Below, one piece after another: positions 5,135-43,735 of a DNA stretch of 64,000 bases. Both the position numbers and the translations under genes were made by a program. Location of the stretch: the IMG/VR virus record IMGVR_UViG_3300042889_001503, positions 62,001-126,000 of that record; one strand, written 5' to 3'. Every line of letters starts with the position of its first letter. Position 1 is the stretch's first letter. The notes beneath the pieces are model-generated. The model had not been told where the DNA came from. It saw nothing but the letters and a program-made list of their open reading frames with translations, and did not search any database.

Positions 5135-5148
5135 CAAAAAAATAAAAT

Positions 5149-6216: not shown

Positions 6217-6217
6217 T

Positions 6218-9200
6218 ATGAGTAATTTTTTAAATAACATACCAGTTTCACCTATAAAATCATTAGGTAATCCTTCTGTTCGTAATAACGCAACATTTGG
6301 AACAAATTTCAGTATCCTTCAAACAGGGGGGTATATGGAAGTTTACAATTTAACCGATTTAGATTACATAATCCCTAACGGTTATCAAGGTTTAGTTGAA
6401 TATTCCGGTAATACGATTCCGGTTCAGTTACAAATTGGGACGGGTCAAATTTTTTCACCTAATGTGTTAACATTAAATTCTGACAACATTTCTTCAGGTA
6501 GAAGAAAATTAGGGATGTTAGTTTATGTTTATGAAACCAAAAAAATATATCAATACAATATTGATAATTATGATACGTTATGGAACAACGCTACCGGAGC
6601 AACAGGTCCGGGGGGTTCTACAGTAGTTATATCAAATTTTGGAACAACGGTTAAAAATAACTCACCTGAAGGTATTGTGTTAATTAATGCTTGGACGGCA
6701 TCAACAATATCAGGTATTAATGGTTATGACGATACAAACGCTTCTTGGAGAGTTCTTCAAACATTTACCGGAGGAACAGTAACGGGAGCAACAATATTTA
6801 CAGATGGTTTAACTGCAAACACAATATCGGCAACAACATATCAAAATTTGCCTGCAACACCTTTCTTACCATTATCAGGAGGAACAGTGACCGGAGCAAC
6901 AATATTTACAGATGGTTTAACTGCAAACACAATTTCCGCAACAACATATCAAAATTTGCCTGCAACACCTTTCTTACCATTATCAGGAGGAACAGTAACG
7001 GGAGCAACAATATTTACAGATGGTTTAACTGCAAACACAATTTCCGCAACAACATATCAAAATTTGCCTGCAACACCTTTCTTACCATTATCAGGAGGAA
7101 CAGTAACGGGAGCAACAATATTTACAGATGGTTTAACCGCAAACACAATTTCGGCAACAACATATTATAATTTACCAAAAGACGTTTTTATTACCGGAGG
7201 AACATATTTCCAAGGCAACACTATTTTTACAAATAGTACAGGTGGTACTTTTAATATTTTTGGACCATCTAATTATGACCCGGGAGTTATTAGTGGTAAC
7301 ACAGGTTGGTCAAGTAATAATGACGGGTCAATTAATTTACCGCAGATAACGGTTGCATTATACGACAACCCTAATTTTTTTGAGCCTCTTAAATTTTATT
7401 CAATTTCAAGCGGAACCACAGGTGTCGGGTCACTTCCGGCATTAATAAATAACGACACAAATTATATTATAATTGAATATAATAATGGGGTTCCTAGATA
7501 TAATGTTTTAGATAATGAGGGGACTGTTGATTTTAGTAGTATTCTATTATATATGATTGTCTATCGAACAAATAATTTTATTCACGTTTTAGAGTTTGGT
7601 GATGAGGGTGCGGGTTTACCAAGTAAATTAAATGAACGTATTGTATATACAGATAGATTCGCGAGAGAAAGTGGTTGTTCGTTAGGTTTAAGTGGAAGTA
7701 CAGGTATTGTAACCTTATCTTCAGGTGTTGTTTGGAACGCCACTAATCGTCAAATAGTTAATGACACAACTTCATTAGGACTTTTTTTTAGAAATTTCCA
7801 TTCAGGCGGTACGTGGGTTTATACCACAACAGCAAATACAATTAATAATCTTTACTATGATAATGGTACTGATTTAGTATCAGCAACCGCAGGAAAATAT
7901 TTAGTTAATTGGTATTTTAGAGGACAAGAATTAAATGACCACTTATATGAGGTGGTTAGTGATGGACAATTCGATAATATATTATTAGCGGACGCTTCAA
8001 GTGAACCAAATTTACCTGAACTAATTACATCACACACATTTTTGGTTGGTAGGATTATTATTGAGGTAAGTGCGACAACAGGTATTACACAGTCGGCATT
8101 TTCATCAGTATTTCAACCAAGTGGTGCTCCCGGAGTTCACAATGATTTAACGAACATACAAGGAGGTCTTCCTAACCAATATTATCATTTAGATTCAAAC
8201 AAATATAATAATTTAGCATTAACAAATATTGATAATAATTTTAGTGCGGGACAAACATTTGCATCAGGGTTAACTGCAACTACAATATCCGCAACAACAT
8301 ACCAAAATTTACCACCAACACCTTTCTTACCTTTATCAGGTGGAACGGTAACAGGTCAAGTAATACTAAAAAATAACTCGAGCCCATTAATAATCACAAC
8401 CGATAATTATAGTCCGGGGATATCAGGTAATATACTATTTTACGGGGATATCACGGGGTCAACTAATGGGAAGTCAATTAGTTCTAGGTCAAACGGGGGT
8501 GGAAATCCAGGGAATTTAATCCTTCAAGAATTAGGGAATGGTAATGTTGGTGTTAATACAAATGTTGTCAATCCAATATTAAATTTTAATTTAGATGTAA
8601 ACGGTACTTTTGGTGCGACATCAGTATCAGCAACAACTTATTTTAATTTACCGGCAACACCTTTCTTACCATTATCAGGAGGAACAGTGACAGGTGCAAC
8701 AAACTTTACAGGAGGTTTAACCGCCACTACTATTTCAGCAACAACATACCAAAATTTACCACCAACACCTTTCTTACCATTATCAGGAGGAACAGTAACG
8801 GGAGCAACAATATTTACAGGAGGTTTAACGGCAAATACAATATCCGCAACAACAATAAGTGGGGGAACTGTAGTTCTTAACTCAACCAATCTACCGTCAA
8901 CACCGATTGCTGTTTCAGCATTTACTGATGATTATAATAGAGTTACTCTATCACCCGGAGGTTCACCATCGTTAACCTACACAAATACAAATACAGGTGC
9001 TGGTAATGCAACAATAACGGCATCAACTTATTTAAATATTGCAAACGGAAATCCTGCGGGTCAGTCATACACTACGGTACCATTATCCGGTTTTAACTCA
9101 CCATTTAATCCAACATTATCATTAAATACTGTAAATGTTGAATGGTCATTTAATCTAAGAACAAATAGAAACACCATATTTCCAGGATTCTCAGCCGGTA

Positions 9201-10240
9201 CCTATGGAGCTGCAGTTGTTTTAGCGGGTACTAGTGGAACACTTCTGAATACCGGTAACGGATACGCATTAGTTTATGGTGGAACAGGAACAAGAAATTG
9301 GAGGTTAGTTAGATATACCAGTGGATTATTTGGTACTAGAACAGATATAATTTCAGGAGGTGTTTTCGCGGCAGGTACTAATTATGTTAGTGCAAGAATT
9401 GTATATACGCCATCAACAAATACTTGGACATACTATTTCAGAGACGATGGTGCAGTTGCGTGGGGTGACCCTACAACCGTAACAACATTAATTGGTAGTG
9501 CAGTTGATAGTACATACACGTCTAGTTTAATGAGTTCTCTTGGAGTATTCTTTAATTATTCAACCGCAGCAAATCAAAATTTACAATTTGATAATTTAGT
9601 TGTTAAACTAAACTCACCTTCTGTATTTACTCCTCAAAGTTATTTAACGTTGAAAAATTACGCAAATACTGAAGTATTTGATGTTAAAGATGATGGTTCA
9701 GTAACATCGACCGGACTTATATCATCAACCGGGGGTATCTCAGGAACAACAATTAGTGGTGGAACATATTTTGGTAATGGTAGTGCACTTACGTTGGGTC
9801 AATTTGGTACGATGATAACAGGTTCTACCTCATTACTCGTTACCAATACAACTACATTACTAACATTAATACCGGGATTGACCACTACAATAACTGTACC
9901 TACACAAACTATGGTTTGTATACAAACAAATGGTGGGGTTAATACCGTTGGAACCACAACAACTAGTGGTTCGGCAATTGATGTGGCATTAGTGGTGGAT
10001 GGTATTATATTACCCAACGGTGGATATCAAAGAATGTATGCCGACAACCCAACGGGAAATGCTACGGTAGGAAACTGGGTCGCAAATTGGAATATGTCGG
10101 TTATTATAACATTATCAGCAGGAATTCATACTGTTGAGGTTGATACAGCAACTGTTCAGGGTCAAAACGCCACGGTAAGTGGTGGTTTTGGAGCAATAAA
10201 CCAAGGCACATTAACAATAATGATATTAAAAAATACATAA
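6218..10240 (+). CDS. Tail-fibre-like protein with 36-aa repeats and a lectin-like domain shared with the first ORF
   Basis: 1340 aa, Gly/Thr/Ser-rich. Repeated FLPLSGGTVTG motif typical of phage fibre shafts. AFTDDYNR...NLQFDNL domain also present in the first ORF. Confidence 0.7.
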   Translation: MSNFLNNIPVSPIKSLGNPSVRNNATFGTNFSILQTGGYMEVYNLTDLDYIIPNGYQGLVEYSGNTIPVQLQIGTGQIFSPNVLTLNSDNISSGRRKLGMLVYVYETKKIYQYNIDNYDTLWNNATGATGPGGSTVVISNFGTTVKNNSPEGIVLINAWTASTISGINGYDDTNASWRVLQTFTGGTVTGATIFTDGLTANTISATTYQNLPATPFLPLSGGTVTGATIFTDGLTANTISATTYQNLPATPFLPLSGGTVTGATIFTDGLTANTISATTYQNLPATPFLPLSGGTVTGATIFTDGLTANTISATTYYNLPKDVFITGGTYFQGNTIFTNSTGGTFNIFGPSNYDPGVISGNTGWSSNNDGSINLPQITVALYDNPNFFEPLKFYSISSGTTGVGSLPALINNDTNYIIIEYNNGVPRYNVLDNEGTVDFSSILLYMIVYRTNNFIHVLEFGDEGAGLPSKLNERIVYTDRFARESGCSLGLSGSTGIVTLSSGVVWNATNRQIVNDTTSLGLFFRNFHSGGTWVYTTTANTINNLYYDNGTDLVSATAGKYLVNWYFRGQELNDHLYEVVSDGQFDNILLADASSEPNLPELITSHTFLVGRIIIEVSATTGITQSAFSSVFQPSGAPGVHNDLTNIQGGLPNQYYHLDSNKYNNLALTNIDNNFSAGQTFASGLTATTISATTYQNLPPTPFLPLSGGTVTGQVILKNNSSPLIITTDNYSPGISGNILFYGDITGSTNGKSISSRSNGGGNPGNLILQELGNGNVGVNTNVVNPILNFNLDVNGTFGATSVSATTYFNLPATPFLPLSGGTVTGATNFTGGLTATTISATTYQNLPPTPFLPLSGGTVTGATIFTGGLTANTISATTISGGTVVLNSTNLPSTPIAVSAFTDDYNRVTLSPGGSPSLTYTNTNTGAGNATITASTYLNIANGNPAGQSYTTVPLSGFNSPFNPTLSLNTVNVEWSFNLRTNRNTIFPGFSAGTYGAAVVLAGTSGTLLNTGNGYALVYGGTGTRNWRLVRYTSGLFGTRTDIISGGVFAAGTNYVSARIVYTPSTNTWTYYFRDDGAVAWGDPTTVTTLIGSAVDSTYTSSLMSSLGVFFNYSTAANQNLQFDNLVVKLNSPSVFTPQSYLTLKNYANTEVFDVKDDGSVTSTGLISSTGGISGTTISGGTYFGNGSALTLGQFGTMITGSTSLLVTNTTTLLTLIPGLTTTITVPTQTMVCIQTNGGVNTVGTTTTSGSAIDVALVVDGIILPNGGYQRMYADNPTGNATVGNWVANWNMSVIITLSAGIHTVEVDTATVQGQNATVSGGFGAINQGTLTIMILKNT
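6770..7170 (+). repeat. 108-bp near-perfect tandem repeat (~3.7 copies) encoding GGTVTGATIFTDGLTANTISATTYQNLPATPFLPLS
   Basis: Units start at 6770, 6878, 6986 and 7094. Further copies at about 8270-8355 and 8625-8855. Confidence 0.95.
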
Positions 10241-10241
10241 T

Positions 10242-10742
10242 ATGGAATATACAAATTGGAATTTTTTGACGATTGTTTTATATCAAAATATTTTAGAAAT
10301 AAATAGTCTTTTAATAATGAGAAGGGATATTAATACAATGGATAGTATTTCAGTTAAAAATCTATTGAATGACGTTTCTAATTCTATTGTGTTAGACGCA
10401 ATAAAAACACAAAATGGGATTTCCGATTGTAAGAATTGGGATGCAATCGAAATACGTTTATCGTTAAATGATGAAGTATATAAAAATTTTAAATCAACAA
10501 GAAGTGAATTTGACAACAATCAATTTGATTTAGGTTATTTTTTATATGACGCATTTGTTGCTTTATCATTAGACGATATTGATAATCAACAAATTTATAT
10601 ACCATCAGACACTCTTTATTCGGAAGAGTTAATTATTAACCAAAATGAAGAACCTATTTTTTCCGGTATAACAACTACATTTAAAACCGTTGATGGATTA
10701 ACTGTTGTAATTAAAAATGGGTTAGTAATTTCAATTGGTTAA
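10242..10742 (+). CDS. Hypothetical protein, possibly fibre-associated
   Basis: 166-aa ORF directly after the fibre gene, ending in the beta-rich segment FKTVDGLTVVIKNGLVISI. Confidence 0.45.
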   Translation: MEYTNWNFLTIVLYQNILEINSLLIMRRDINTMDSISVKNLLNDVSNSIVLDAIKTQNGISDCKNWDAIEIRLSLNDEVYKNFKSTRSEFDNNQFDLGYFLYDAFVALSLDDIDNQQIYIPSDTLYSEELIINQNEEPIFSGITTTFKTVDGLTVVIKNGLVISIG

Positions 10743-10773
10743 TTAGGACTATTTATTAAATAATGAATAGTTT

Positions 10774-13416
10774 ATGCAAGTAATTGAAATCACAAGTTTA
10801 TCCGGACATTCCCCATATAACATATCAATATGTGATATAACAAGAACGTATTGTTATGTTGTTGCGACAGCTGTCTCATCAGTCCCGTTAATTCTAAACA
10901 TACCAACAGAATTATCAGGTTCTCAAGAAGTCTTAGTGATAGTCACAGATAACATTGGTTGTGAAGAAATTCAATATCATTTTTGTGGTGAACCTGCTCC
11001 TAGTCAAACACCAACGACAACACCCACTCCCACACCAACAAATTCCGTTTGTAATTGTATCTCAATTGATAACCCTTTAGGGGTAACATTAAATTTTGGG
11101 TATACTCAATGTGACGGGACATTAATCTATGGTGAGATTTACTCGGCAACCACATTATATGTTTGTGGTCAATTTCCGTATGGTGATAGTGGATTAATAA
11201 TTCAGGTTTCATCTAATATTTGTGTTGGGGATGTTTGCCCCGGACCAACACCTACACCAACCACCACTCCGACACCCACTCCAACATTACCACCGATAGT
11301 TGGTTATTTTGAGGATAGTTGTGATTCATCAAACCAATTTACCTTATCAAACATACCAATATCATTTAGTCCTCTGTCAGGAGCGTATTATATTGAAAGT
11401 AGTGGTTTCATTGGATGTGCCACTTATGTTGTTAGTTCATCTACAAACAATTTCTATTCATTTATTGCGATGGGTTCTCAACCGAGTATTTACCATTGTC
11501 AGAAAGCCAATTTTATCTATCCGTGTCCAACATCAACACCCACACCAACACCTACACCATCAATAACACCATCGGTAACTCCGACTCATACACCTACACC
11601 AACTCCGACTCACACTCCCACACCAACAACACCTGTTAAGTATGTGTTGTTCCAAGTTCAATCTTGTTGTGCTAAAAAGATTATAAAATATATTATGTTA
11701 CCGTCTAACTTTTTACCGGGAACTGCGGTTGTCAATTCATTTGGTGAGTGTTTAGAAATTATTAGTGTATCTAAAATTGTGACTTGGGTAACCGATTTTT
11801 GGGACCACGGAACAACATACATTTTTTGTGAGGTATGTGTTAAATATCAAACTTGTAATCCTGTTATACCACCATCCTTTATCTCTGTTTGGAGAACAAC
11901 AACTATAAACGAATCAATTACATTACCATATGAAACTTCGGGGTTTTATTATGGAACAATTGATTGGGGTGATGGGGAAACCTCTAATAATATTTACGAT
12001 AATAGAACACACACATATGTAACTCCGGGTGATTATATAATAACAATAACAGGGACATTAATTGGGTGGTCGTTTGGTGTTAACCCTATTAGTAGAAATA
12101 AAATTAGAGAAGTTCTACAGTGGGGTTGTTTACGTTTGGGTAATAGTGGTTCGTATTTTTCTAATTGTAATAATTTATCATTATCAAATGTTACCGATGT
12201 TTTAGATTTAACGGGAACAAATAATTTATCTTATACGTTTGAGAATTGTACTAATTTAACAACAGTCCCTTTTATAAATTCTTGGAACACATCAAACGTA
12301 ACAAATATGCAAGGTATGTTTTTTGAGTGTCATAATTTTAATGACGACATATCAGGTTGGGATGTTAGTAATGTTACTGATATGGGAGCAATGTTTGATA
12401 ACACTTATTTATTTAATCAGCCAATTGGTGTTTGGGATGTATCAAATGTTCAATCTATAAGTTATATGTTCTTACAAAATACCGTTTTTAACCAAAATTT
12501 AAGTTCTTGGAATGTTGGTAGTGTTACTAATATGAAAGGAACTTTTAATGGTTGCACATCATTTAATAACGGTGGTTCACCAATGATTAGTGGTTGGACA
12601 ACATATAATGTTACTGATATGGGTGATATGTTCCCTTTAACACCATTTAACCAACCAATTAATTCTTGGGATGTTAGTAGTGTTACTAAAATGGATTATA
12701 TGTTTTATCAATCAACATCATTTAACCAACCATTATCGGGATGGAATGTAAGTAATGTTACAGATATGAATTATATGTTTAGTTTATCCCCATTTAATCA
12801 ATATATTAATTCTTGGGATGTATCAAATGTTACAACTATGGAAGGTATGTTCTTTTTTAACACAATATTCAACCAAAACCTTAATTCTTGGGATGTAAGT
12901 TCAGTAACTAATATGGATTATATGTTTTGGTTTGATTACGCATTTGATGGTAATATAACTAGTTGGGACACTTCTAATGTTACAACAATGAGATTAATGT
13001 TTGCTACGTGTAGTATTTTTAATCAAAATATTAGTGGTTGGAACGTTGGTAATGTAACAAATATGCAACAGATGTTTAACGGAGCAACACAATTCAATCA
13101 ACCTATTGGTTCTTGGAACGTTAGTAATGTGACTAATATGTCAAATATGTTTGGTTCAGTAGGATTTAATCAAAATATTGGTTCTTGGAACGTTACCGGC
13201 GTAACAAACTTTAATGGATTTATGAATGGTAAAACATTTAGTGATTACTCAACAACAAATCTTGACGCAATTTATAATGGATGGAGTTCTTTACCAACAT
13301 TAACCTCTGGAATTAACATTAATTTTGGAACAATTAAATATACTGCCGGTAGTTCAGCCGGTAGAGCAATTCTAACCGGAACGTATGGTTGGACAATTAT
13401 TGATGGTGGAATATAA
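10774..13416 (+). CDS. BspA/DUF285-repeat surface protein with Cys-rich modules, Pro/Thr linkers and a PKD-like domain
   Basis: 880 aa. More than 10 repeats of FNQ.I..W(D/N)VS.VT.M..MF, plus GTIDWGDG and PT tracts. Confidence 0.8.
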   Translation: MQVIEITSLSGHSPYNISICDITRTYCYVVATAVSSVPLILNIPTELSGSQEVLVIVTDNIGCEEIQYHFCGEPAPSQTPTTTPTPTPTNSVCNCISIDNPLGVTLNFGYTQCDGTLIYGEIYSATTLYVCGQFPYGDSGLIIQVSSNICVGDVCPGPTPTPTTTPTPTPTLPPIVGYFEDSCDSSNQFTLSNIPISFSPLSGAYYIESSGFIGCATYVVSSSTNNFYSFIAMGSQPSIYHCQKANFIYPCPTSTPTPTPTPSITPSVTPTHTPTPTPTHTPTPTTPVKYVLFQVQSCCAKKIIKYIMLPSNFLPGTAVVNSFGECLEIISVSKIVTWVTDFWDHGTTYIFCEVCVKYQTCNPVIPPSFISVWRTTTINESITLPYETSGFYYGTIDWGDGETSNNIYDNRTHTYVTPGDYIITITGTLIGWSFGVNPISRNKIREVLQWGCLRLGNSGSYFSNCNNLSLSNVTDVLDLTGTNNLSYTFENCTNLTTVPFINSWNTSNVTNMQGMFFECHNFNDDISGWDVSNVTDMGAMFDNTYLFNQPIGVWDVSNVQSISYMFLQNTVFNQNLSSWNVGSVTNMKGTFNGCTSFNNGGSPMISGWTTYNVTDMGDMFPLTPFNQPINSWDVSSVTKMDYMFYQSTSFNQPLSGWNVSNVTDMNYMFSLSPFNQYINSWDVSNVTTMEGMFFFNTIFNQNLNSWDVSSVTNMDYMFWFDYAFDGNITSWDTSNVTTMRLMFATCSIFNQNISGWNVGNVTNMQQMFNGATQFNQPIGSWNVSNVTNMSNMFGSVGFNQNIGSWNVTGVTNFNGFMNGKTFSDYSTTNLDAIYNGWSSLPTLTSGININFGTIKYTAGSSAGRAILTGTYGWTIIDGGI

Positions 13417-13469
13417 TTTCTATTTATCTTTTTATAAAAAATATTATTTTTACAATAAAAAGATATTAA

Positions 13470-14717
13470 ATGAAGATATTTGTCCAAATTGCGTCCTATC
13501 GTGACCCCCAACTTATCCCAACAATTAAATCAATGTTGGAGAATGCAAAGAAACCTAAAAATTTAGTAATCGGTATTTGTCGTCAATATCATCCGGAAGA
13601 TGGTTTTGATAATTTATCAGAATTCAAAGGTGATAAACGTTTTAGAGTTATTGATGTTCTATACACCGAATCCAAAGGGGTTTGTTGGGCAAGAAACCAA
13701 GTTCAACAACTATATAAAGGTGAAGAATATACCTTACAAATCGATTCTCATATGAGATTTGAAAAAGATTGGGACGACACCCTAATCAAAATGGTTAAAC
13801 AACTTCAAAAGAAAGGATTTAAGAAACCTTTACTAACAGGTTATGTTTCTTCATTCGACCCGGACAATGACCCGGCAAGTAGAGTTAAAGAACCTTGGAG
13901 AATGGCTTTTGATAGATTTATACCGGAAGGTGCCGTCTTCTTTTTACCTGAAACAATTCCGGGGTGGGAAAATCTTAAAGAACCCGTTACCTCAAGATTT
14001 TACTCCGCCCATATGGCATTTACATTGGGACAATTTAGTGTCGAGGTTCAACACGACCCTGAATTCTATTTCCACGGAGAAGAAATCTCAATCGCTGTTA
14101 GAGCATTTACACACGGATACGATTTATTTCACCCACACAAAACTGTTATTTGGCACGAATATACTCGTAAGGGTAGAACCAAACAATGGGATGATGATAA
14201 AGAGTGGGGTAAGAAAAATGAATTATCTCATAAAAAGAATCGTCAACTATTTGGTATGGACGGTGAAGACGTTACAATGGACTTTAGTTTTTACGGGTTC
14301 GGAACTGAAAGAACTTTAAAAGATTATGAAATTTATTCAGGTCTTAAATTTTCAAATAGAGCTGTTCAACAATATACTTTAGATAAAAATTACGCACCTA
14401 ATCCTCAAATATTTGAAACTGAGGAAGAATGGTTGGCAAGTTACGCTAGTATCTTTAAACATTGTATCGACATTGGATTTTCTCAAGTTCCTGAAAAAGA
14501 TTACGAATTTTGGGTTGTTGCTTTCCACGATGAAAAAGATGAAACACTTTTTAGAAAAGATGCTGATATCAATGAGATTAATAATATGATGAGAGACCCT
14601 GATGGGTATTGTAAAGTTTGGAGAGATTTCCAAACTGTTCATAAACCAAAATACTGGGTTGTTTGGCCGTTTAGTAAGTCAAAAGGTTGGTGTGAAAGAA
14701 TAACAGGTAATTTGTAA
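13470..14717 (+). CDS. GT60-like (Pfam GlcNAc family) polypeptide N-acetylglucosaminyltransferase with an extra C-terminal domain
   Basis: IFVQIASYRDPQL, ESKGVCWAR..VQQLYKGEEY.LQIDSHMRF..DWD, FHGEEI..AVRAFTHGYDLFHP and WHEY match the Gnt1/Skp1-GlcNAc-transferase family signature. Confidence 0.85.
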   Translation: MKIFVQIASYRDPQLIPTIKSMLENAKKPKNLVIGICRQYHPEDGFDNLSEFKGDKRFRVIDVLYTESKGVCWARNQVQQLYKGEEYTLQIDSHMRFEKDWDDTLIKMVKQLQKKGFKKPLLTGYVSSFDPDNDPASRVKEPWRMAFDRFIPEGAVFFLPETIPGWENLKEPVTSRFYSAHMAFTLGQFSVEVQHDPEFYFHGEEISIAVRAFTHGYDLFHPHKTVIWHEYTRKGRTKQWDDDKEWGKKNELSHKKNRQLFGMDGEDVTMDFSFYGFGTERTLKDYEIYSGLKFSNRAVQQYTLDKNYAPNPQIFETEEEWLASYASIFKHCIDIGFSQVPEKDYEFWVVAFHDEKDETLFRKDADINEINNMMRDPDGYCKVWRDFQTVHKPKYWVVWPFSKSKGWCERITGNL

Positions 14718-14721
14718 AAAT

Positions 14722-15429
14722 ATGGAATATGCGATAGCAACATTTTGTTATGGTGATAGATATTATGCCCAAACAAATAGAATGATAGAATCATTTAAAG
14801 AATTTGAAGATAAACCAAATATTTTCATAGTTACAGATAATCCGGAATCAATTACTAAAGAAGATTATGTATTTGTTTCACATATTAAGGAATATAATGA
14901 AAAATATGTGACATATAATACGAATTATTATGATTTTGATTTTTCAGTTAAAAGATTCTCAGTAAAATTTGCGTTAGATAGTGGATTTACTAAAGTAATT
15001 TTAACAGATACGGATGTTATACCAAACAAATCATTATTCACAAAAAAAAATGTGTTAGAGTGTTTTATACCTAATAGTGTTGCCGGTCAAGTAACCTATC
15101 TTTTTGAAAAAGAGGTTGAGACAAATAGTATGTTAGGAAGACGATACTTACATTATGAAAATAAATTTGACGTTCAATATAATAAAGTGGATATGTGGAT
15201 GCCGGAAGACTGCATTCAATTTTTAGATATTGATAAAGATAAATTTTATTCATTTTTAAAAACTTGGGATGAATGTATTGAGATTAAATATGTTGACAAT
15301 TTATATAATATACCTGCGGGTAATATAGATGAAATGTGTTTCTCAGCATTACATAACGGTGTTGACTTAAAAAACAATTCTAGCAAACACATAAACTTAT
15401 TAATCCCCAATCACGACAAATGGTATTAA
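14722..15429 (+). CDS. Putative GT-A fold glycosyltransferase
   Basis: IATFCYG..Y, IFIVTD, VKRF, VILTDTD (DxD) and late GNIDE motif. Lies within the GT operon. Confidence 0.6.
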   Translation: MEYAIATFCYGDRYYAQTNRMIESFKEFEDKPNIFIVTDNPESITKEDYVFVSHIKEYNEKYVTYNTNYYDFDFSVKRFSVKFALDSGFTKVILTDTDVIPNKSLFTKKNVLECFIPNSVAGQVTYLFEKEVETNSMLGRRYLHYENKFDVQYNKVDMWMPEDCIQFLDIDKDKFYSFLKTWDECIEIKYVDNLYNIPAGNIDEMCFSALHNGVDLKNNSSKHINLLIPNHDKWY

Positions 15430-16265
15430 AAATTATTACATCAGTTTATGAATTAAACTATGAAGATTCCAGAGGTGGTATGGTATATAAATCATATCCA
15501 TTATTAACCCAAACATTACGTAGTATAATTTTTGAAGGTTTTGAATATGTTATTTACACTAATCAATACACTTACGACAAATATCATTTAGGTGAACAAT
15601 TTAACCAACCAAATGTAACCATAAAGTTTCACGAATTAAATTCTGAAAATTACCTAAACAACATAAACCCAATTAGATTAGTTAAATTTGCCGAAGGGGA
15701 AATTTACGATAGAATTTATTGTGTTAAAAATTATGTAGAAGTTATTTTTAATAAGTTACAATTTTTACTCGATGAGTGTGAAGATAATAAAAATGTTGTG
15801 TGGATTGATTCCGGACTTTTTGGAACTAGTTGTCACGATAGATGGAGAGATTACATTAATGTTTTTGCCCATTCAGAATTATTTTTAAATAAAATAAATG
15901 AAAAAATATCTGAGAATGGTTTTATTTGTTTAAGAGGAGAATCAATTCAGGTTAATTACGAATTAAAAGCAGTTCTTGTTAATATGTTTAACACAGACTT
16001 TAAGTTAGTTCCCGGAGGTATGTTTGGAGGGACAAGTGAGTCTATTCAAAAAGTTTTATCTAATTACTTATCGATTTTTGAAACATATTACACAACAACA
16101 GGTAAATTAATTAGTGAACAAGAGGTTTTATCTATATTAACTCACACAAATGACGTTAAATTTTTTAATTTTGGTGATTGGTTAGATTTACAAAGAGGGA
16201 TATTGGACCTTATGGATTTATTGGATGTCGACAAATATAAAATTGATGAGAAATATGATGTCTAA
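15420..16265 (+). CDS. Divergent HtrL/YibB (WlaTC)-like glycosyltransferase
   Basis: VVWIDSG, GGMFGG and SEQEVL motifs parallel FWIDAG, AGFFGG and TEESLF in the 16821 ORF. Confidence 0.6.
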   Translation: MVLKIITSVYELNYEDSRGGMVYKSYPLLTQTLRSIIFEGFEYVIYTNQYTYDKYHLGEQFNQPNVTIKFHELNSENYLNNINPIRLVKFAEGEIYDRIYCVKNYVEVIFNKLQFLLDECEDNKNVVWIDSGLFGTSCHDRWRDYINVFAHSELFLNKINEKISENGFICLRGESIQVNYELKAVLVNMFNTDFKLVPGGMFGGTSESIQKVLSNYLSIFETYYTTTGKLISEQEVLSILTHTNDVKFFNFGDWLDLQRGILDLMDLLDVDKYKIDEKYDV

Positions 16266-16824
16266 CTATTCTTTTAACATTGTTTGCACAACTATTGGAA
16301 GAGAATCATTACCAAGATTGATTGATAGTTTTAAAAATCAGTTAACCCAAAACGATTCTTTTACCATAATATCCGATACAAATCACGAGTTTGTTCAAAA
16401 TGTTTTATCTAATTATGATGTTAATTTTAAATTAAATCACATTATAAATGATGGGGATAGATTAGGTAAGTTTGGACACCCTTTATTAAACAAACACATT
16501 AATAACCTTGACGGTGATTTTATTATGTTTGCGGACGACGATGATTATTATGTTGATGATGCCTTTGAGTATATAAGGGAAGTCGTTACAGAAAAAAAAC
16601 TATACATTTTTAAACATAAATGGGGAGGAACAATTAATTGGACGACAAAAGAAGTAACACTAGGGAATATTGGTAAATGTATGGGTGTCATTCCTAATAC
16701 TAAAAATTTACCAATGTTTCAAGAAGACGTATTCGGGGATGGGTTATTTTACGAAGACTTATCCAAAATTATGGAATATGAATTTGTTGATAAAATAATA
16801 TATAAAATTAGAGATACAATATGA
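16255..16824 (+). CDS. GT2-like glycosyltransferase
   Basis: IVCTTIGRESLPRLIDS, IISD and FIMFADDDDYY. ATG at 16255/16258 overlaps the upstream stop and is a likelier start than 16225. Confidence 0.7.
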   Translation: MMSNYSFNIVCTTIGRESLPRLIDSFKNQLTQNDSFTIISDTNHEFVQNVLSNYDVNFKLNHIINDGDRLGKFGHPLLNKHINNLDGDFIMFADDDDYYVDDAFEYIREVVTEKKLYIFKHKWGGTINWTTKEVTLGNIGKCMGVIPNTKNLPMFQEDVFGDGLFYEDLSKIMEYEFVDKIIYKIRDTI

Positions 16825-18494
16825 GTAAAGTAACATTAGTGACAGGATTATGGGATATAGGTAGAGGAGACCTTCAAGAGGGTTGGTCTCGTTCATTCCA
16901 ACATTATTTAGATAAATTTCAACAACTATTACAAGTTGATGTGAATATGATTATTTTTGGTGACGAAGAGTTAGAGAAATTTGTGTCAAACAATAGACGA
17001 AGTGAAAACACACAATTTGTTCGTAGAAGTTTGTCTTGGTTTAAAGACAACGATTTTTTTGATAAAATACAAAATATAAGAACAAATCCGGATTGGTATA
17101 ATCAAGTCGGATGGTTAACCGATTCAACTCAAGCTAAATTAGAGATGTATAACCCGTTGGTTATGTCAAAAATTTATCTCCTACACGATGCTAAAATTTT
17201 AGATAGGTTTAATTCAGAATATATGTTTTGGATTGACGCTGGGTTAACAAATACAATTCACCCGGGATATTTTACACACGATAAGGTTTTAGATAAATTA
17301 CCTCAATTAGTTAAAAATTTTCATTTTGTTTGTTTCCCTTATGAAACTAATTCTGAAATCCACGGATTTAAATATCCTGAATTATGTGAATTAGCCGGAG
17401 AACCAGTTAAAATGGTTGCTCGAGCAGGTTTCTTCGGAGGAAGAAAAGATGTTATATCAGATATTAACGGTATCTATTACGGGTTAATGAATGATACATT
17501 ATCACAAGGGTTAATGGGAACTGAAGAATCGTTATTTACAATTATGACATACAAATACCCTGAGTTGATTAGTTATTCAGAAATAGAAGATAATGGATTA
17601 ATGGGTAAATTTTTTGAGGACTTAAAAAATAACACGACTCAAGTTAAAGAAAGTGTTTTACCAATTAAACCGAATAGTTTAGACACATCCAAAGTTGGAT
17701 TGTATGTTATAGCATTTAACTCACCTAAACAATTTGAGGTATTAATCCAATCTATGTTAGATTATGATTCTGACTTTATTGATAAACCAAAAAAATTCTT
17801 ATTAGATAACTCAACCGATTTATCAACAACACCAAGATATCTTGAACTATGTGAACAATATGGTTTTGAACATATTAAAAAAGACAACATTGGTATTGTC
17901 GGGGGGAGAGTGTTTGTTGCTGAACATTTTGATGAAACTGATTTAGATTGTTATTGGTGGTTTGAAGACGATATGGCTTTTTATCCAAAAAAAGGTGAGG
18001 TATGTAGAAATGGGTTCCCTCGTTTTGTTGATAAATTATATCAAAAATCAGTAGAGATTGTTAAAAAAGAAAATTTTGATTTTCTTAAATTAAATTTTAG
18101 TGAATTTTTTGGTGATAATAGTGTTCAATGGAGTTGGTATAATGTCCCTCAAGATTTTAGACAATCTCATTGGCCGAATAACCCTAAATTACCGGTTCAA
18201 GGACTAGACCCTAATTCACCTAAAACACAATTTAAGGAGATAAGGACATATAAAGGGTTATCATATGCGACAGGGGAAGTTTATTTATGTAATTGGCCGA
18301 TAATATTAACAAGAGAAGGTAACTATAAGTGTTATTTAGAAACAAAATGGGCTCACCCATTTGAACAGACGTTAATGTCTTATTGTTATCAAGAAACTGT
18401 TAAAGGAAAAATTAATCCGGGATTATTGTTATTAACACCAACGGAACACGATAGATTTGAACATTATGACGGTTCATTAAGAAAAGAAAGTTAA
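16821..18494 (+). CDS. Two-domain glycosyltransferase: HtrL/YibB-like N-terminal domain plus GT-A C-terminal domain
   Basis: TLVTGLWDIGR, RSFQHYL..F..LL, MSK..LL and FWIDAG in the first domain. LYVIAFNSP, LLDNS and WWFEDD in the second. Confidence 0.75.
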   Translation: MSKVTLVTGLWDIGRGDLQEGWSRSFQHYLDKFQQLLQVDVNMIIFGDEELEKFVSNNRRSENTQFVRRSLSWFKDNDFFDKIQNIRTNPDWYNQVGWLTDSTQAKLEMYNPLVMSKIYLLHDAKILDRFNSEYMFWIDAGLTNTIHPGYFTHDKVLDKLPQLVKNFHFVCFPYETNSEIHGFKYPELCELAGEPVKMVARAGFFGGRKDVISDINGIYYGLMNDTLSQGLMGTEESLFTIMTYKYPELISYSEIEDNGLMGKFFEDLKNNTTQVKESVLPIKPNSLDTSKVGLYVIAFNSPKQFEVLIQSMLDYDSDFIDKPKKFLLDNSTDLSTTPRYLELCEQYGFEHIKKDNIGIVGGRVFVAEHFDETDLDCYWWFEDDMAFYPKKGEVCRNGFPRFVDKLYQKSVEIVKKENFDFLKLNFSEFFGDNSVQWSWYNVPQDFRQSHWPNNPKLPVQGLDPNSPKTQFKEIRTYKGLSYATGEVYLCNWPIILTREGNYKCYLETKWAHPFEQTLMSYCYQETVKGKINPGLLLLTPTEHDRFEHYDGSLRKES

Positions 18495-18530
18495 TTCTAT
18501 ATTTTGAAGTATTTATAAATAAAAACTTTA

Positions 18531-19217
18531 ATGGAATTTTTTATAAAGAAAAACGCAACCTTACCTCTTCTTAAACTTCAAGTAGTAAAAGATGGTAGAA
18601 GTGATTACAATAATTTTATGGAATTATTGGAATCCTCAACCATATTCTTTTCTATGGTTAATTCTGAGACAGGTATTCCAAAAATAACTTCAAGACCAGC
18701 GGGGTTTGTTGAAAAAATATTTGACGACCCCAATGCAGAACCTGAATATTATATTTACTATCAATTTACCAAACAAGACACGAGTGTTGAGGGTAGAAAT
18801 GAAGGACAATTTTTAATAAAGACATCTGACGGTAATATAATATTACCAATTAGGGAAAAACTAAACATATATATTCAAGAGTCATTTATTGCTGACGATT
18901 TAGAATATGATACTTGCTACACATCAGTTTATCCTTGTTGTGTATCACATTCTGTTATACCACAACCACCATCACTTGTATATTTTAATTATGAATTAAT
19001 TAAAGACAAAGATTTTATTTATAAAACAATCCCTAATAATAATTTAGATGACGATGTTATACCAAATAACGATATTATAACGAGTAATATTCCTGACAAT
19101 AATTTAGGTGATGACATCATACCAAATAACAATATTATAACAAATAGTATTCCTGATAATAATTTAGGTGATGATATAATCCCAAATAATGATATTATAT
19201 CAAACATTTTACTTTAA
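18531..19217 (+). CDS. Putative structural protein (BppU-like N-terminal beta domain) with an Asn/Asp/Ile repeat tail
   Basis: FFIKKNATLPLLKLQV...YYQF...DT..EG..EGQF.I...G.IILP pattern followed by three 20-aa repeats. Confidence 0.5.
   Translation: MEFFIKKNATLPLLKLQVVKDGRSDYNNFMELLESSTIFFSMVNSETGIPKITSRPAGFVEKIFDDPNAEPEYYIYYQFTKQDTSVEGRNEGQFLIKTSDGNIILPIREKLNIYIQESFIADDLEYDTCYTSVYPCCVSHSVIPQPPSLVYFNYELIKDKDFIYKTIPNNNLDDDVIPNNDIITSNIPDNNLGDDIIPNNNIITNSIPDNNLGDDIIPNNDIISNILL
19029..19208 (+). repeat. 60-bp tandem repeat x3 (IPDNNLGDDIIPNNNIITSN-like)
   Basis: Units start at 19029, 19089 and 19149, each with an internal 30-bp periodicity (IPxNN). Confidence 0.9.
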
Positions 19218-19273
19218 CTTTTTTAAAGTGTTTGATATTTATAAATAAATAAAAAAAAACAAAAAAAATAATT

Positions 19274-20347
19274 ATGTCAATAGGTTTAAGAATTATCAGT
19301 AATAATTTAATAGGTAAAACCGCGTCTGTTACCTTTACTCCAGCATCCGGAGGGACACCACAAAATTTAGGTATTCAGACAATACCATTTAATAATATTA
19401 CACCATATCCATATGGTAATTATGATATTAATGTTTTAGAATATAACTATAGTTACAATTTTAATGTGCCGGCGCCGGCTCCATTACAATCAGGTTATAC
19501 AACTACCCTTAGAGGTATTGTTAATCCGGAAGGTGGTTTAGCATATTCTTCGTCAACGTTATCGGAATCTTGGGGTGAGTATACAAAAGGATTTATTACT
19601 AGTAAAGGTTATTCCCCTGATGATATTATTTACGCCGAAGGTATATGTTCTGATGATGTTGATGGTCCCGTATTTACAGGTGTTGATAATATTGGACAAT
19701 TTCCAACTTCTATGAACACATTTCTTGGTCCGTTTATGTCAGGTGGTTTAGCAGGGTTCCCATTTGTTGGAACTGTTGGGTTAGGTGCTTGGGCTAGCCA
19801 CATTACAAGTGGCGGAACTTTATTTATAACAAGTACACCTCATATTGGTGTAACAATAGATGGTCGTGCGGGAAGAATGTTAAGAAAAGGTAAACCAGAT
19901 AGTATCACAGATAATACTTGTGGAGCTGTGGCGGGAGCCATAGGTGAGGTATTAACAACTTGGAGTGCTACCACACCAACATTTAGTACTTATTCAGGTT
20001 CAGGAGATTATGAATTTTATAAGTTAGTTGATATCTTATGGCCGTTTCGTGGTACATTATCAGGATTTACGGGAACATCGGAAGAAATATATAATAAACA
20101 AATGATTTTTTCAACAAATAAAATTAAAGAAAACGCATTTACTTATTTATTTGCTAATTTATCGGGAGCAACAAATAGTGTGTTATTATCAAGACCTTCT
20201 ACTGAGATATTTTTCACTAGTGGTGTTTTTATTAATACAGATTATGGATATGAATCATACGTTAATATCGACCAATTTTGGAAATATAGTATTAACGGTG
20301 GTTGGGTTGACCTAACATCAGAATATGTTTCAGGATTACCATTATAA
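19274..20347 (+). CDS. LCIB/LCIC-family beta-type carbonic anhydrase fused to an N-terminal virion-protein-like module
   Basis: GICSDD (C125, D127), GPF.SGGLAGFPFVG.VGLGAWASH, PHIG (H190), G..G...R.G (R204) and TCGA (C216) give the Cys/His/Cys zinc-ligand pattern of the LCIB family. Confidence 0.8.
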   Translation: MSIGLRIISNNLIGKTASVTFTPASGGTPQNLGIQTIPFNNITPYPYGNYDINVLEYNYSYNFNVPAPAPLQSGYTTTLRGIVNPEGGLAYSSSTLSESWGEYTKGFITSKGYSPDDIIYAEGICSDDVDGPVFTGVDNIGQFPTSMNTFLGPFMSGGLAGFPFVGTVGLGAWASHITSGGTLFITSTPHIGVTIDGRAGRMLRKGKPDSITDNTCGAVAGAIGEVLTTWSATTPTFSTYSGSGDYEFYKLVDILWPFRGTLSGFTGTSEEIYNKQMIFSTNKIKENAFTYLFANLSGATNSVLLSRPSTEIFFTSGVFINTDYGYESYVNIDQFWKYSINGGWVDLTSEYVSGLPL

Positions 20348-20350
20348 AAC

Positions 20351-20377
20351 AAAAAGACCTTCGGGTCTTTTTTTTTT
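20351..20377 (+). terminator. Rho-independent terminator
   Basis: aaaagacc-TTCG-ggtctttt followed by a T run. Confidence 0.9.
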
Positions 20378-20381
20378 GTAT

Positions 20382-20413
20382 TTGACTAAATGAGATTATT
20401 ACAATATATTTAT
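20382..20413 (+). promoter_or_regulatory. Putative early promoter of the DNA polymerase gene
   Basis: TTGACT-17 nt-TATATT. Can also be read as Bacteroidota-type TTTG...TAnnTTT(A). Confidence 0.6.
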
Positions 20414-43408: not shown

Positions 43409-43735
43409 ATGACTAATAGACAAAATTATAATAGGTATAATGAATTTTTAATAAATGGTGAACAGAGTGTTGTCCCATACATCTCCATTTCAAGTAAATC
43501 ATCAGATAAAAGAGTAATTTATAAGATAGGTCAATCTAGATTGGATAAAATATCTCAACAATATTATGGTACACCAACATTTGGGTGGTTAATTTTAGCC
43601 GCAAACCCAATTTTTGGGGGAAATGAGTGGGCTATCCCGGATGCTGCTATATTGACAATTCCATTTCCTTTAGTATCATCTTTACAAGAATATAAATCTC
43701 AATTAGACAATCATTTCTATTATTATGGTAGGTAA
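43409..43735 (+). CDS. LysM-like baseplate wedge protein (gp53/tail X-like)
   Basis: RLDKISQQYYGTPTFGWLILAANP...IP....LTIP. Confidence 0.8.
   Translation: MTNRQNYNRYNEFLINGEQSVVPYISISSKSSDKRVIYKIGQSRLDKISQQYYGTPTFGWLILAANPIFGGNEWAIPDAAILTIPFPLVSSLQEYKSQLDNHFYYYGR

What the first reader, a model, noticed from the sequence alone, without database searches (positions are those of the whole stretch)
19274..20347. Phage-encoded LCIB-family carbonic anhydrase, apparently displayed on the virion
Seen: intact C125/H190/C216 with D127 and R204 and the GGLAGFPF.G..G..A..SH motif, a late-type TATTTAT motif upstream, and an N-terminus homologous to a PT-linker protein. Known: LCIB/LCIC proteins are zinc beta-type carbonic anhydrase-fold proteins of algal CO2-concentrating mechanisms with scattered prokaryotic homologues. 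Inference: this is not a typical cytoplasmic auxiliary metabolic gene but an enzyme tethered to the particle (local pH/bicarbonate control, carbonate surfaces), or a fold repurposed as a structural oligomer. I do not know of a described example, but could not search the literature.
Basis: partly seen in the sequence, partly recalled or inferred. Interest (0 to 1): 0.85.

Follow-up and report, generated by a model that had tools for sequence, protein, structure and literature searches.

The report
Phage carbonic-anhydrase-like enzyme on swappable adaptor
A very large uncultured phage carries an intact algal-type (LCIB/theta) carbonic anhydrase domain fused to a small N-terminal module that the same phages also put on several unrelated proteins. 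This suggests an optional enzyme "cargo", possibly carried on the virus particle, and such a gene has not been described in a phage before.

Summary
ORF 19274-20347 (357 aa) hits Pfam LCIB_C_CA (E 4.6e-27). Its model superposes on PtLCIB4 and 6KFS (TM 0.84-0.86). It keeps C125/S126/D127, H176, H190, R204 and C216, which stay invariant out to 25-30% identity.

The host genome is a roughly 272 kb T4-like jumbo myophage. The gene belongs to a strongly supported LCIB clade seen so far only in phage or phage-like contexts. That clade is absent from 50,697 GenBank phage records and from BFVD, and I found no paper on it.

New findings:
- Residues 1-68 form an adaptor module that always starts at residue 1. 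The same phages attach it to at least six other "cargo" types.
- These genes sit in one variable island. A ~700-aa cargo can occupy the exact LCIB slot behind the same promoter-like motif.
- The gene is accessory (9 of 66 relatives carry it near the polymerase gene) and appears to move between phages.
- The TATTTAT motif is positionally real and shared with sheath, tube and baseplate genes.
- A crAss-like lineage carries LCIB inside its capsid/tail gene block.

Virion attachment is the best-supported reading (about 0.42) but is unproven. A cytoplasmic auxiliary enzyme is nearly as likely.

The parts
19236..19247 (+). Promoter-like palindrome TATTTATAAATA containing the TATTTAT late-type motif, followed by an A-rich leader (19248-19273) with no Shine-Dalgarno sequence
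   Evidence: The same element lies upstream of ORF 18531 (18510-18521), sheath, tube, baseplate and gp13-like genes. It is conserved upstream of LCIB in L001, L003 and L094, and upstream of the ~700-aa cargo gene in L096.
19274..20347 (+). Complete gene for a 357-aa adaptor-plus-LCIB protein (stop codon included)
   Evidence: dN/dS against the 93%-identical L094 copy is 0.08 in both domains.
19274..19465 (+). N-terminal adaptor module (residues 1-64), predicted as a four-strand small beta domain. It always starts at residue 1 in every protein that carries it.
   Evidence: Fold and language-model leads point only to Ig-like or carboxypeptidase-regulatory-type beta-sandwiches, and none is significant.
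19466..19486 (+). Short proline-rich hinge VPAPAPL (residues 65-71). In the paralogue ORF 5149 the equivalent is a ~100-aa Pro/Thr linker.
19487..20344 (+). LCIB / theta-type beta-carbonic-anhydrase-fold domain (residues 72-357)
   Evidence: Pfam hit. AlphaFold2 pLDDT is above 90 across residues 70-357. Foldseek E is 2e-17 with TM 0.84-0.86 to 5B5Y and 6KFS.
19646..19654 (+). Codons for C125-S126-D127: first zinc ligand, the 'active-type' Ser, and the catalytic Asp
   Evidence: C125 and D127 are invariant in alignments A1, A2 and A3.
19799..19801 (+). Codon for H176, equivalent to PtLCIB4 His88
   Evidence: Mapped from the alignment. Invariant in A1 and A2.
19841..19843 (+). Codon for H190, second zinc ligand
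19883..19885 (+). Codon for R204, the invariant Arg equivalent to the first Arg of PtLCIB4 'ARRG'
19919..19921 (+). Codon for C216, third zinc ligand
20351..20380 (+). Intrinsic terminator (9-bp stem AAAAAGACC/GGTCTTTTT plus a T-run). It separates the gene from the DNA polymerase gene, which has its own TTGACT-17-TATATT promoter at 20382-20410.
5149..6216 (+). Paralogous adaptor-module protein: N-module (5149-5370), ~100-aa Pro/Thr linker, then an unknown C-terminal domain
   Evidence: No Pfam, PHROG or PDB match.
365..19217 (+). The variable island that holds the gene: DUF285 (BspA-like) giant repeat proteins, the adaptor-module paralogue, five glycosyltransferase-type genes and ORF 18531

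Best explanation
The gene encodes a two-part accessory protein of a roughly 272 kb T4-like jumbo phage. Residues 72-357 are a zinc enzyme of the LCIB/theta carbonic anhydrase family with a complete, selectively maintained active site. It most likely interconverts CO2 and bicarbonate. Residues 1-64 are a small beta-domain 'adaptor', followed by a proline-rich hinge. These phages place the same adaptor at the extreme N-terminus of many different cargo domains, and the cargo genes swap in and out of one hypervariable island. The gene has its own promoter-like element of the type that precedes the tail and neck genes, and its own terminator. My reading is that the adaptor docks its cargoes onto a common site of the virus particle, so the enzyme is an optional, late-made, particle-borne accessory. 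Shown: family, fold, catalytic residues, purifying selection, phage origin, module sharing, cassette swapping, positional promoter motif. Inferred: enzymatic activity, late timing, docking to the virion, and what the enzyme does there.
For: Family, fold and site. The catalytic residues are invariant across the family down to 25-30% identity, and dN/dS is 0.08. Phage context: sheath, tube, gp25, gp6, gp13-like and gp32 genes are in the window, and the sequence is 100% identical to loci from IMG/VR contigs of up to 272 kb. The adaptor module always starts at residue 1 and is 50-82% identical across proteins whose remaining parts differ. Its cargoes are a ~700-aa beta-rich family, DUF285 repeats, the C-terminal domain of the Pro/Thr-linker protein, and several unknowns. 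All of them lie in the island between the DUF285 giant gene and the DNA polymerase gene. The ~700-aa cargo occupies the LCIB slot in L096 with the same ATATTTATAAATA element and A-rich leader. The TATTTAT motif is shared with sheath, tube, baseplate and gp13-like genes, whereas gp32 and the DNA polymerase gene have TTGAC(A/T)-N17-TATAnT-type promoters. Independent lineage: in the crAss-like contigs L288 and L299, LCIB lies between the major capsid gene and virion structural or tail-fibre-like genes on the same strand.
Against: There is no proteomic or structural evidence that any adaptor-bearing protein is in a particle. The adaptor matches no Pfam, PHROG or PDB domain significantly. A particle-borne carbonic anhydrase has no known precedent and no obvious physical benefit. 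The gene is sporadic: 9 of 66 close relatives carry it within 6 kb of the polymerase gene, and 1 of 45 crAss-like relatives carries it in the equivalent slot. That pattern also fits a conditional metabolic gene. Other phage LCIBs lack the adaptor, and some sit beside dCMP deaminase, RNA ligase and lysozyme genes. Chlamydomonas LCIB and LCIC keep the zinc site yet show no activity in vitro (PMC5876011). 'Late' is inferred from which genes carry the motif, and a DnaB-like helicase gene also carries it.
Confidence: 0.42

Rival explanations
1. It is a cytoplasmic auxiliary metabolic enzyme. The protein stays in the infected cell and speeds CO2/bicarbonate interconversion. In a heterotrophic host this would feed bicarbonate-dependent carboxylations for nucleotide and lipid synthesis. 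In a cyanobacterial host it would dissipate the cytosolic bicarbonate pool and shut down carbon fixation. On this reading the N-terminal module is an oligomerisation or localisation domain unrelated to the particle.
For: The active site is intact and under purifying selection. The gene is sporadic in variable islands of at least three phage lineages and appears to move horizontally: LCIB is 89-91% identical where the polymerase is only 73% identical (L199, L162). In L085 and L309 tandem LCIB pairs sit next to dCMP deaminase, RNA ligase and lysozyme genes. Some phage-clade members have almost no N-terminal extension. Alpha, beta and gamma carbonic anhydrases have been reported as viral auxiliary genes in viromes (bioRxiv 10.64898/2026.01.21.700432). 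The closest cultured relative by shared, collinear core genes is a cyanophage, Microcystis phage Mel-JY01.
Against: It does not explain why the same strictly N-terminal module is fused to DUF285 repeat, Pro/Thr-linker and ~700-aa beta-rich cargoes, or why those swap at the same locus. The promoter-like motif is the one used by structural genes, not the sigma-70-like type found at replication genes. The phage clade sits on a long branch away from all cellular homologues, so this is not a recent host pick-up. The host is unknown.
Confidence: 0.35
2. The fold has been repurposed without catalysis. The LCIB domain would serve as an oligomerising structural or binding unit, on or off the particle, as proposed for the Chlamydomonas LCIB-LCIC complex. 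The zinc site would be kept for stability or ligand sensing only.
For: Chlamydomonas LCIB and LCIC retain the zinc site but have no measured activity (PMC5876011). The other cargoes on the same adaptor look like binding modules rather than enzymes, namely DUF285 repeats and a possible beta-propeller-like domain. The propeller suggestion is a lead only.
Against: Conservation extends beyond the zinc ligands. D127, H176 and R204 are also invariant or nearly so out to 25-30% identity. H176 and R204 are most likely the counterparts of the His and Arg whose disorder is blamed for inactivity in Chlamydomonas LCIB and LCIC (PMC5876011); I infer this from residue spacing, not from an alignment. Position 126 is Ser as in PtLCIB4, not the Arg of its S47R mutant.
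Confidence: 0.13
3. It is not really a phage gene, but a bacterial or algal gene on a mis-binned or chimeric contig.
For: LCIB is best known from algae, and bacterial homologues are common.
Against: The gene is flanked on both sides by phage genes in the window and is collinear in many independent IMG/VR contigs from different samples. The best homologue in any genome of the 185,579-species collection is at most 41% identical, apart from one 1.5 kb fragment binned into a metagenome-assembled genome. The tree places the gene in a clade supported at 100% (SH-aLRT) that contains no verified cellular member.
Confidence: 0.02

Closest known systems
PtLCIB4 (PDB 5B5Y) of Phaeodactylum tricornutum and the 6KFS 'CCM related' LCIB_C_CA protein (LCIB / theta-type carbonic anhydrases)
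   Same: Same Pfam family and same fold (Foldseek E about 1e-17, TM 0.84-0.86). The Cys-His-Cys zinc ligands, Asp, Arg and His88-equivalent are the same, and Ser follows the first Cys.
   Different: Identity is only 21-23% in the structural alignment. The phage protein carries a 68-aa N-terminal adaptor absent from the algal proteins, is encoded by a tailed phage, and belongs to a separate long-branched clade. Its activity is untested.
Chlamydomonas LCIB/LCIC (PDB 5K5W, 5B5X)
   Same: Same family and fold (Foldseek E about 4e-9 to 6e-9). The tandem LCIB gene pairs in other phages (L085, L309) recall the LCIB-LCIC hetero-complex.
   Different: Much weaker sequence match (E about 0.01). The algal proteins are chloroplast-targeted and inactive in vitro (PMC5876011). 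Ser126 in the phage protein matches the wild-type residue of PtLCIB4 rather than the Arg of its S47R mutant.
Bacterial single-domain LCIB_C_CA proteins (Bacteroidota, Balneolota, Planctomycetota, Methylobacter and others)
   Same: Same domain, and the nearest cellular branch in the tree.
   Different: Identity is 25-41%. These proteins are about 230-275 aa with the CxD motif at about residue 47-51, so they have no N-terminal extension. None falls inside the phage clade.
Alpha, beta and gamma carbonic anhydrases reported as viral auxiliary genes in viromes (bioRxiv 10.64898/2026.01.21.700432)
   Same: A virus-encoded enzyme for the same reaction.
   Different: Different enzyme classes, treated there as host-like auxiliary genes, and with no adaptor architecture. 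That paper does not mention LCIB, and no LCIB homologue is detectable in GenBank phages or BFVD.
Conserved N-terminal anchor plus exchangeable C-terminal domain in phage tail fibres and tailspikes, and Ig-like decoration domains such as T4 Hoc (recalled from general knowledge, not tested here)
   Same: A constant N-terminal module, variable C-terminal cargo, location in a hypervariable island, and swapping at one locus.
   Different: There is no sequence or significant fold match to any known anchor or Ig-like family. The cargo here is a metabolic-type metalloenzyme, not a receptor-binding domain or depolymerase. Virion location is unproven.

Membership tests
LCIB / theta-type beta-carbonic anhydrase family (Pfam PF18599) | Profile match above the curated gathering score | tested here: met
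   95.2 bits against a cutoff of 25, E 4.6e-27, profile positions 6-216 of 223.
LCIB / theta-type beta-carbonic anhydrase family (Pfam PF18599) | LCIB-type beta-CA fold | tested here: met
   The AlphaFold2 model has pLDDT above 90 over residues 70-357. Foldseek to 5B5Y and 6KFS gives E about 2e-17 to 7e-17 and target TM 0.84-0.86. Classical beta-CAs follow at E about 1e-4.
LCIB / theta-type beta-carbonic anhydrase family (Pfam PF18599) | Cys-His-Cys zinc ligands | tested here: met
   C125, H190 and C216 align to the matching residues of 5B5Y and are invariant in A1, A2 and A3. The zinc-site geometry could not be measured because model coordinates are not exposed.
LCIB / theta-type beta-carbonic anhydrase family (Pfam PF18599) | Catalytic Asp plus the conserved Arg and His that complete the active site | tested here: met
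   D127, R204 and H176 are invariant. H176 maps to His88 of PtLCIB4 using the chain-numbering offset implied by the S47R and H88A entry names. The importance of the His and Arg is taken from PMC5876011.
LCIB / theta-type beta-carbonic anhydrase family (Pfam PF18599) | Measured CO2 hydration activity and bound zinc | not testable with these tools
   This needs recombinant protein. Some family members (Chlamydomonas LCIB and LCIC) are inactive in vitro despite an intact site.
Phage auxiliary metabolic gene | Metabolic-type gene encoded in a bona fide phage genome, patchily distributed among close relatives | tested here: met
   Phage context. Present in 9 of 66 relatives near the polymerase gene and 1 of 45 crAss-like relatives.
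Phage auxiliary metabolic gene | Recognisable recent host origin (a close cellular homologue) | tested here: not met
   The best cellular homologues are 25-41% identical. The phage proteins form their own long-stemmed clade.
Phage auxiliary metabolic gene | Acts in the infected cell's metabolism | not testable with these tools
   The host is unknown, and there are no expression or physiology data.
Virion (structural or decoration) protein | Detected in purified particles | not testable with these tools
   No cultured relative carries the gene.
Virion (structural or decoration) protein | Co-regulated with structural genes | tested here: inconclusive
   It shares the TATTTAT element with sheath, tube, baseplate and gp13-like genes. 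However, timing is inferred, and a DnaB-like helicase gene also carries the motif.
Virion (structural or decoration) protein | Encoded within a structural gene module | tested here: inconclusive
   In the window the gene lies between a glycosyltransferase cluster and the DNA polymerase gene, at the end of a DUF285/adaptor island. In the crAss-like contigs L288 and L299 it lies inside the portal-capsid-tail block.
Virion (structural or decoration) protein | Carries a domain known to anchor proteins to particles (Ig-like, known fibre anchor) | tested here: inconclusive
   The adaptor is modelled as a small beta domain. Only non-significant Ig-like, FN3 or T9SS-CTD-like fold hits (E at least 0.7) and weak language-model leads were found. 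There are no Pfam or PHROG hits.

The most novel reading that the evidence does not exclude
These jumbo phages have a natural 'plug-and-display' system. One conserved 68-aa N-terminal adaptor docks interchangeable cargo proteins onto the particle, and one of the cargoes is an active LCIB/theta-type carbonic anhydrase. That would make it the first metabolic metalloenzyme of this kind carried by a virion. It would act either at the host surface on local CO2/bicarbonate/pH, or after delivery into the cell on the host's inorganic-carbon pool.
Probability: 0.3. Interest if true: 0.85.

Novelty: new variant of a known kind. Interest (0 to 1): 0.68.

Why it matters
LCIB/theta carbonic anhydrases are known as parts of algal CO2-concentrating mechanisms, with scattered bacterial homologues. 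This analysis shows a diverse LCIB clade, seen so far only in phage or phage-like contexts. At least 135 IMG/VR contigs and at least three phage lineages carry it. It is absent from all cultured-phage records and I found no paper on it.

If the enzyme is active, phages are manipulating CO2/bicarbonate chemistry in a way not yet considered. This would matter most if the hosts are cyanobacteria, where a stray carbonic anhydrase is expected to collapse carbon concentration.

Independently, the adaptor-plus-swappable-cargo architecture is a clean, testable case of modular protein display or targeting in uncultured jumbo phages. It also offers a candidate natural scaffold for phage display.

Tried and rejected
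- **PHROGs:** no family for the LCIB protein, the adaptor paralogue, ORF 18531 or the ~700-aa cargo family.
- **GenBank phages:** tblastn with the query and with two other LCIBs (P0131 from the phage clade, P0151 its nearest outgroup) found nothing. Megablast of 20 kb of the window also found nothing.
- **BFVD fold search:** no LCIB or beta-CA fold.
- **First AlphaFold2 run:** the shallow alignment gave a poor active-site loop. A second run with divergent homologues fixed the enzyme domain but lost the adaptor.
- **A misreading corrected:** the apparent '55% LCIB' hit in L096 turned out to be an adaptor-only match to a 694-aa protein.
- **A parallel adaptor in crAss-like phages:** the ~45-aa N-extension of crAss-like LCIBs occurs only on LCIB proteins, so there is no multi-cargo adaptor there.
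- **Context of further clade members:** P0123, P0125, P0129, P0131, P0203, P0172 and P0194 lie only on short contigs, which was uninformative.
- **Host identification:** no tRNAs in the window, and only weak hints: cyanophage-like core genes, almost no Shine-Dalgarno sites, and sigma-70-like early promoters. The host is left open.
- **Literature:** the original PtLCIB4 structure paper could not be read, so residue roles rest on PDB entry names and a review.
- **Contamination or chimera:** considered and rejected.
Full report
**Observation.**
- It hits Pfam LCIB_C_CA (PF18599) at 95.2 bits, E 4.6e-27, against a gathering score of 25.
- C125, D127, H190, R204 and C216 are at the stated positions, and GGLAGFPF.G..G..A..SH is residues 157-176.
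- A phmmer search of the PDB finds 6KFS (E 1.2e-16) and PtLCIB4 5B5Y (E 6e-13), and more weakly Chlamydomonas LCIB and LCIC.
- From that alignment, and the numbering offset implied by the mutant entry names (S47R, H88A), I map C125/S126/D127 to PtLCIB4 C46/S47/D48. H176 maps to H88, H190 to H102, R204 to R116 and C216 to C126.
- The residue after the first cysteine is therefore Ser, as in wild-type PtLCIB4, not Arg as in its S47R mutant.

**Fold.** A first AlphaFold2 run on 28 close homologues gave pLDDT 71 with a disordered active-site loop, but a reasonably confident four-strand N-terminal domain. A second run on 33 divergent homologues gave pLDDT above 90 for residues 70-357. Foldseek against the PDB returns PtLCIB4 and 6KFS (E about 2e-17 to 7e-17, target TM 0.84-0.86). 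CrLCIB and LCIC follow, then classical beta-carbonic anhydrases at E about 1e-4. Model coordinates are not exposed, so zinc geometry could not be measured.

**Genome context.** The window is 32.8% G+C. It encodes:
- a family B DNA polymerase, an SNF2 helicase and a gp13-like neck protein;
- a 1197-aa tail sheath, a gp19-like tube, and T4-type baseplate proteins (gp25, gp6/J);
- gp32, a RecA-like protein, a 5'-3' exonuclease, a DnaB-like helicase and both ribonucleotide reductase subunits.

The DNA polymerase gene and its flanks are 100% identical to IMG/VR contigs of up to 272 kb. This is a T4-like jumbo myophage. The closest cultured relative is Microcystis phage Mel-JY01 (190 kb, 34.4% G+C). 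It shares 9 of 41 window proteins in the same order at 23-42% identity, but has no LCIB.

**Conservation and selection.** More than 245 clusters of full-length homologues (52-93% identity, 355-358 aa) exist in metagenomes, on contigs of up to 320 kb.
- The catalytic residues are invariant in the close family.
- They remain invariant when homologues down to 25-30% identity are added: C125, D127, H176, H190, R204 and C216.
- dN/dS against the 93%-identical L094 copy is 0.08, both in the N-terminal module and in the enzyme domain.

**A distinct phage LCIB clade.**
- A full HMMER scan of 1.84 billion representatives found 724 relatives.
- In 185,579 species genomes the best homologues are 25-41% identical (Bacteroidota, Balneolota, Planctomycetota, Methylobacter, Acidobacteriota). 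The one exception is a 1.5 kb fragment binned into a metagenome-assembled genome.
- A maximum-likelihood tree of 198 domains puts the query in a clade of 29 rows supported at 100% (SH-aLRT), on a long stem of 1.19 changes per column. That clade holds every LCIB for which I could verify a phage context and no verified cellular sequence.
- At least 135 IMG/VR contigs carry clade members.
- No GenBank phage record has a detectable homologue, whether queried with the window protein, another clade member (P0131) or the clade's nearest outgroup (P0151).
- No BFVD structure has the fold.
- Full-text searches found no paper linking LCIB to phages. Alpha, beta and gamma carbonic anhydrases have been reported as viral auxiliary genes in a 2026 preprint.

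**The N-terminal adaptor.** Residues 1-68 are homologous to the N-terminus of window ORF 5149..6216, which continues into a ~100-aa Pro/Thr linker and an unknown C-terminal domain.
- The representative search showed many proteins that match only residues 1-70, at 50-82% identity, while their remaining parts differ.
- In every case the module begins at residue 1 (consensus MAIGxRIxSxNLSGKTAxVTF...PYGxY...EYDYTY) and is followed by a proline-rich hinge.
- In 54 IMG/VR loci the cargoes were a ~700-aa beta-rich family (29 genes), LCIB (20) and at least six other sizes. One carries the C-terminal domain of the Pro/Thr-linker protein. In L001 the cargo is a DUF285 (BspA-like) repeat array.
- All but one of the twelve loci I mapped in detail show the same island: DUF285 giant gene, adaptor gene or genes, an optional glycosyltransferase cluster, the ORF 18531 homologue, then DNA polymerase. 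The exception, L217, has the adaptor gene next to DUF285 genes but away from the polymerase gene.
- In L096 (polymerase 97% identical to the window's) a 694-aa adaptor protein sits about 400 bp upstream of the polymerase gene, in the slot LCIB occupies in the window. It is preceded by the same ATATTTATAAATA element and A-rich leader.
- The adaptor has no Pfam, PHROG or PDB match. Language-model and Foldseek leads point to small Ig-like or carboxypeptidase-regulatory-type beta-sandwiches, but none is significant.

**Accessory and mobile.** Among 66 relatives (polymerase 72-100% identical) with enough upstream sequence, only 9 have LCIB within 6 kb of the polymerase gene. In many of them the ORF 18531 homologue directly abuts that gene. 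LCIB similarity does not track polymerase similarity. L199 and L162 have LCIB at 89-91% identity but polymerase at 73%. L133 has polymerase at 81% but LCIB at 51%. P0147 looks like a frameshifted remnant of the gene.

**Expression signals.**
- TATTTAT is not over-represented in the window as a whole.
- Seventeen sense-strand copies lie within 70 nt upstream of 16 of 41 genes, against 2.2 +/- 1.5 in shuffles of those same stretches and 6 antisense copies.
- The genes carrying it include sheath, tube, baseplate, the gp13-like gene, the DUF285 880-aa gene, ORF 18531 and LCIB.
- gp32 and the DNA polymerase gene instead have TTGAC(A/T)-N17-TATAnT-type promoters.
- The motif is conserved upstream of LCIB in phages whose LCIB is only ~54% identical.
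- A strong intrinsic terminator follows the gene.
- 'Late' is therefore a reasonable but indirect inference, and a DnaB-like helicase gene also has the motif.

**Other phage lineages.**
- L085 and L309 carry tandem LCIB pairs: one copy with a 100-140-aa N-extension and one without. In L085 they lie next to dCMP deaminase, HNH, RNA ligase and lysozyme genes.
- L288 (from a 90 kb contig) and L299 (from a 128 kb contig) are crAss-like (Crass_capsid E 1.7e-31). Their 315-aa LCIB lies on the same strand between portal, capsid and two unknown genes on one side. On the other side lie a PHROG 'virion structural protein', an IHF-like gene and a tail-fibre-like gene.
- There too the gene is accessory, present in 1 of 45 close relatives that span the slot. 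Its ~45-aa N-extension occurs only on LCIB proteins.
- Bacterial homologues have essentially no N-extension.

**Weighing the explanations.** It is established that this is a phage gene for an LCIB-family protein with a fully conserved, selected active site. Two readings then compete.
- *For virion association:* the shared, strictly N-terminal adaptor on cargoes that look extracellular (BspA-like repeats, Pro/Thr linkers, beta-rich ~700-aa proteins); cargo swapping at one locus behind one promoter-like element; use of the motif found at structural genes; and the structural-module position in a crAss-like lineage.
- *For a cytoplasmic auxiliary enzyme:* the low prior for a particle-borne carbonic anhydrase; the patchy, horizontally moving distribution; adaptor-free LCIBs next to nucleotide-metabolism genes; and the lack of any direct evidence that adaptor proteins are structural.
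- I put virion association at about 0.42, a purely cytoplasmic enzyme at about 0.35, and non-catalytic use of the fold at about 0.13. The last overlaps with either location.
- Activity is likely but not certain, because Chlamydomonas LCIB and LCIC keep the site yet are inactive in vitro (PMC5876011).

**Host.** The host is unknown.
- Hints toward a cyanobacterium are the Mel-JY01 relationship and distant polymerase matches to Nostoc and Anabaena phages.
- Only 1 of 41 genes has a Shine-Dalgarno-like site, and early genes have sigma-70-like promoters.
- The crAss-like carriers would more likely infect Bacteroidota (general knowledge), and the nearest cellular LCIBs are largely Bacteroidota.
- I leave the question open.

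**Verdict.** The finding is a new variant of a known kind: a previously undescribed LCIB/theta carbonic anhydrase clade in phages, here mounted on a modular adaptor. Interest is 0.68.

Noticed in passing
window 365-13416; L001, L171-L224: A hypervariable island of giant DUF285 (BspA-like leucine-rich repeat) proteins of 1589, 1340 and 880 aa, interleaved with adaptor-module genes. It is conserved in position next to the DNA polymerase gene but highly variable in content among close relatives.
   Followed up: partly
window 13470-18494: A cluster of five glycosyltransferase-type genes. One matches PF11397 (E 2.5e-70), described by Pfam as the cytoplasmic GlcNAc transferase that glycosylates hydroxylated Skp1. 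There are also an HtrL_YibB-type and a GT2-type gene. The cluster lies next to proteins with Pro/Thr or Pro/Ala linkers. The distant relative Mel-JY01 has an annotated prolyl 4-hydroxylase (L227 46571-47170). This may be phage-encoded protein glycosylation.
   Followed up: no
window 18531-19217 (repeats 19038-19204): A 228-aa protein with a conserved ~113-aa N-terminal domain and 2.8 copies of a 60-nt (20-aa) repeat (IPDNNLGDDIIPNNDIITxx). It has the same TATTTATAAATA element upstream. Its homologue sits directly upstream of the DNA polymerase gene in most relatives. It has no known family.
   Followed up: partly
window-wide; e.g. 20382-20410, upstream of 51675 and 50920: Two promoter-like classes. 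TATTTAT lies upstream of tail, neck and island genes. TTGAC(A/T)-N17-TATAnT lies upstream of the gp32 and DNA polymerase genes, and a TTGACA lies upstream of ORF 50920. Only 1 of 41 genes has a Shine-Dalgarno-like sequence, and most have A-rich leaders.
   Followed up: partly
L085 8001-10067; L309 7560-9693: Other phages carry two LCIB genes in tandem, one with a 100-140-aa N-terminal extension and one without. The two L085 copies fall in different subclades of the phage clade, and the arrangement recalls the algal LCIB-LCIC pair.
   Followed up: partly
L288 57-16175; L299; L310-L389: Environmental crAss-like phages have a 2-4 kb variable slot between the capsid-proximal genes and a 232-aa virion structural gene. 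LCIB occupies it in a minority of them. A 92-aa ORF in the slot matches a domain found at the C-terminal ends of many longer PHROG families.
   Followed up: partly
P0147 (87 aa, metagenomic): This appears to be a frameshifted remnant of the LCIB gene: 82% identical to residues 1-66 of the window protein, then unrelated sequence. It is consistent with the gene being dispensable.
   Followed up: no
window 30541-34134: The tail sheath protein is unusually long (1197 aa). Only the last ~280 residues match the sheath Pfam domains, and about 620 residues align to the Mel-JY01 sheath. It probably has large inserted or N-terminal extra domains.
   Followed up: no
window 38493-43406 and 43725-50648: Two giant ORFs (1637 and 2307 aa) lie downstream of the tube and baseplate genes. 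They were not characterised. Mel-JY01 has similarly placed genes of about 1350 and 2250 aa. They could be tape-measure, hub or fibre proteins.
   Followed up: no
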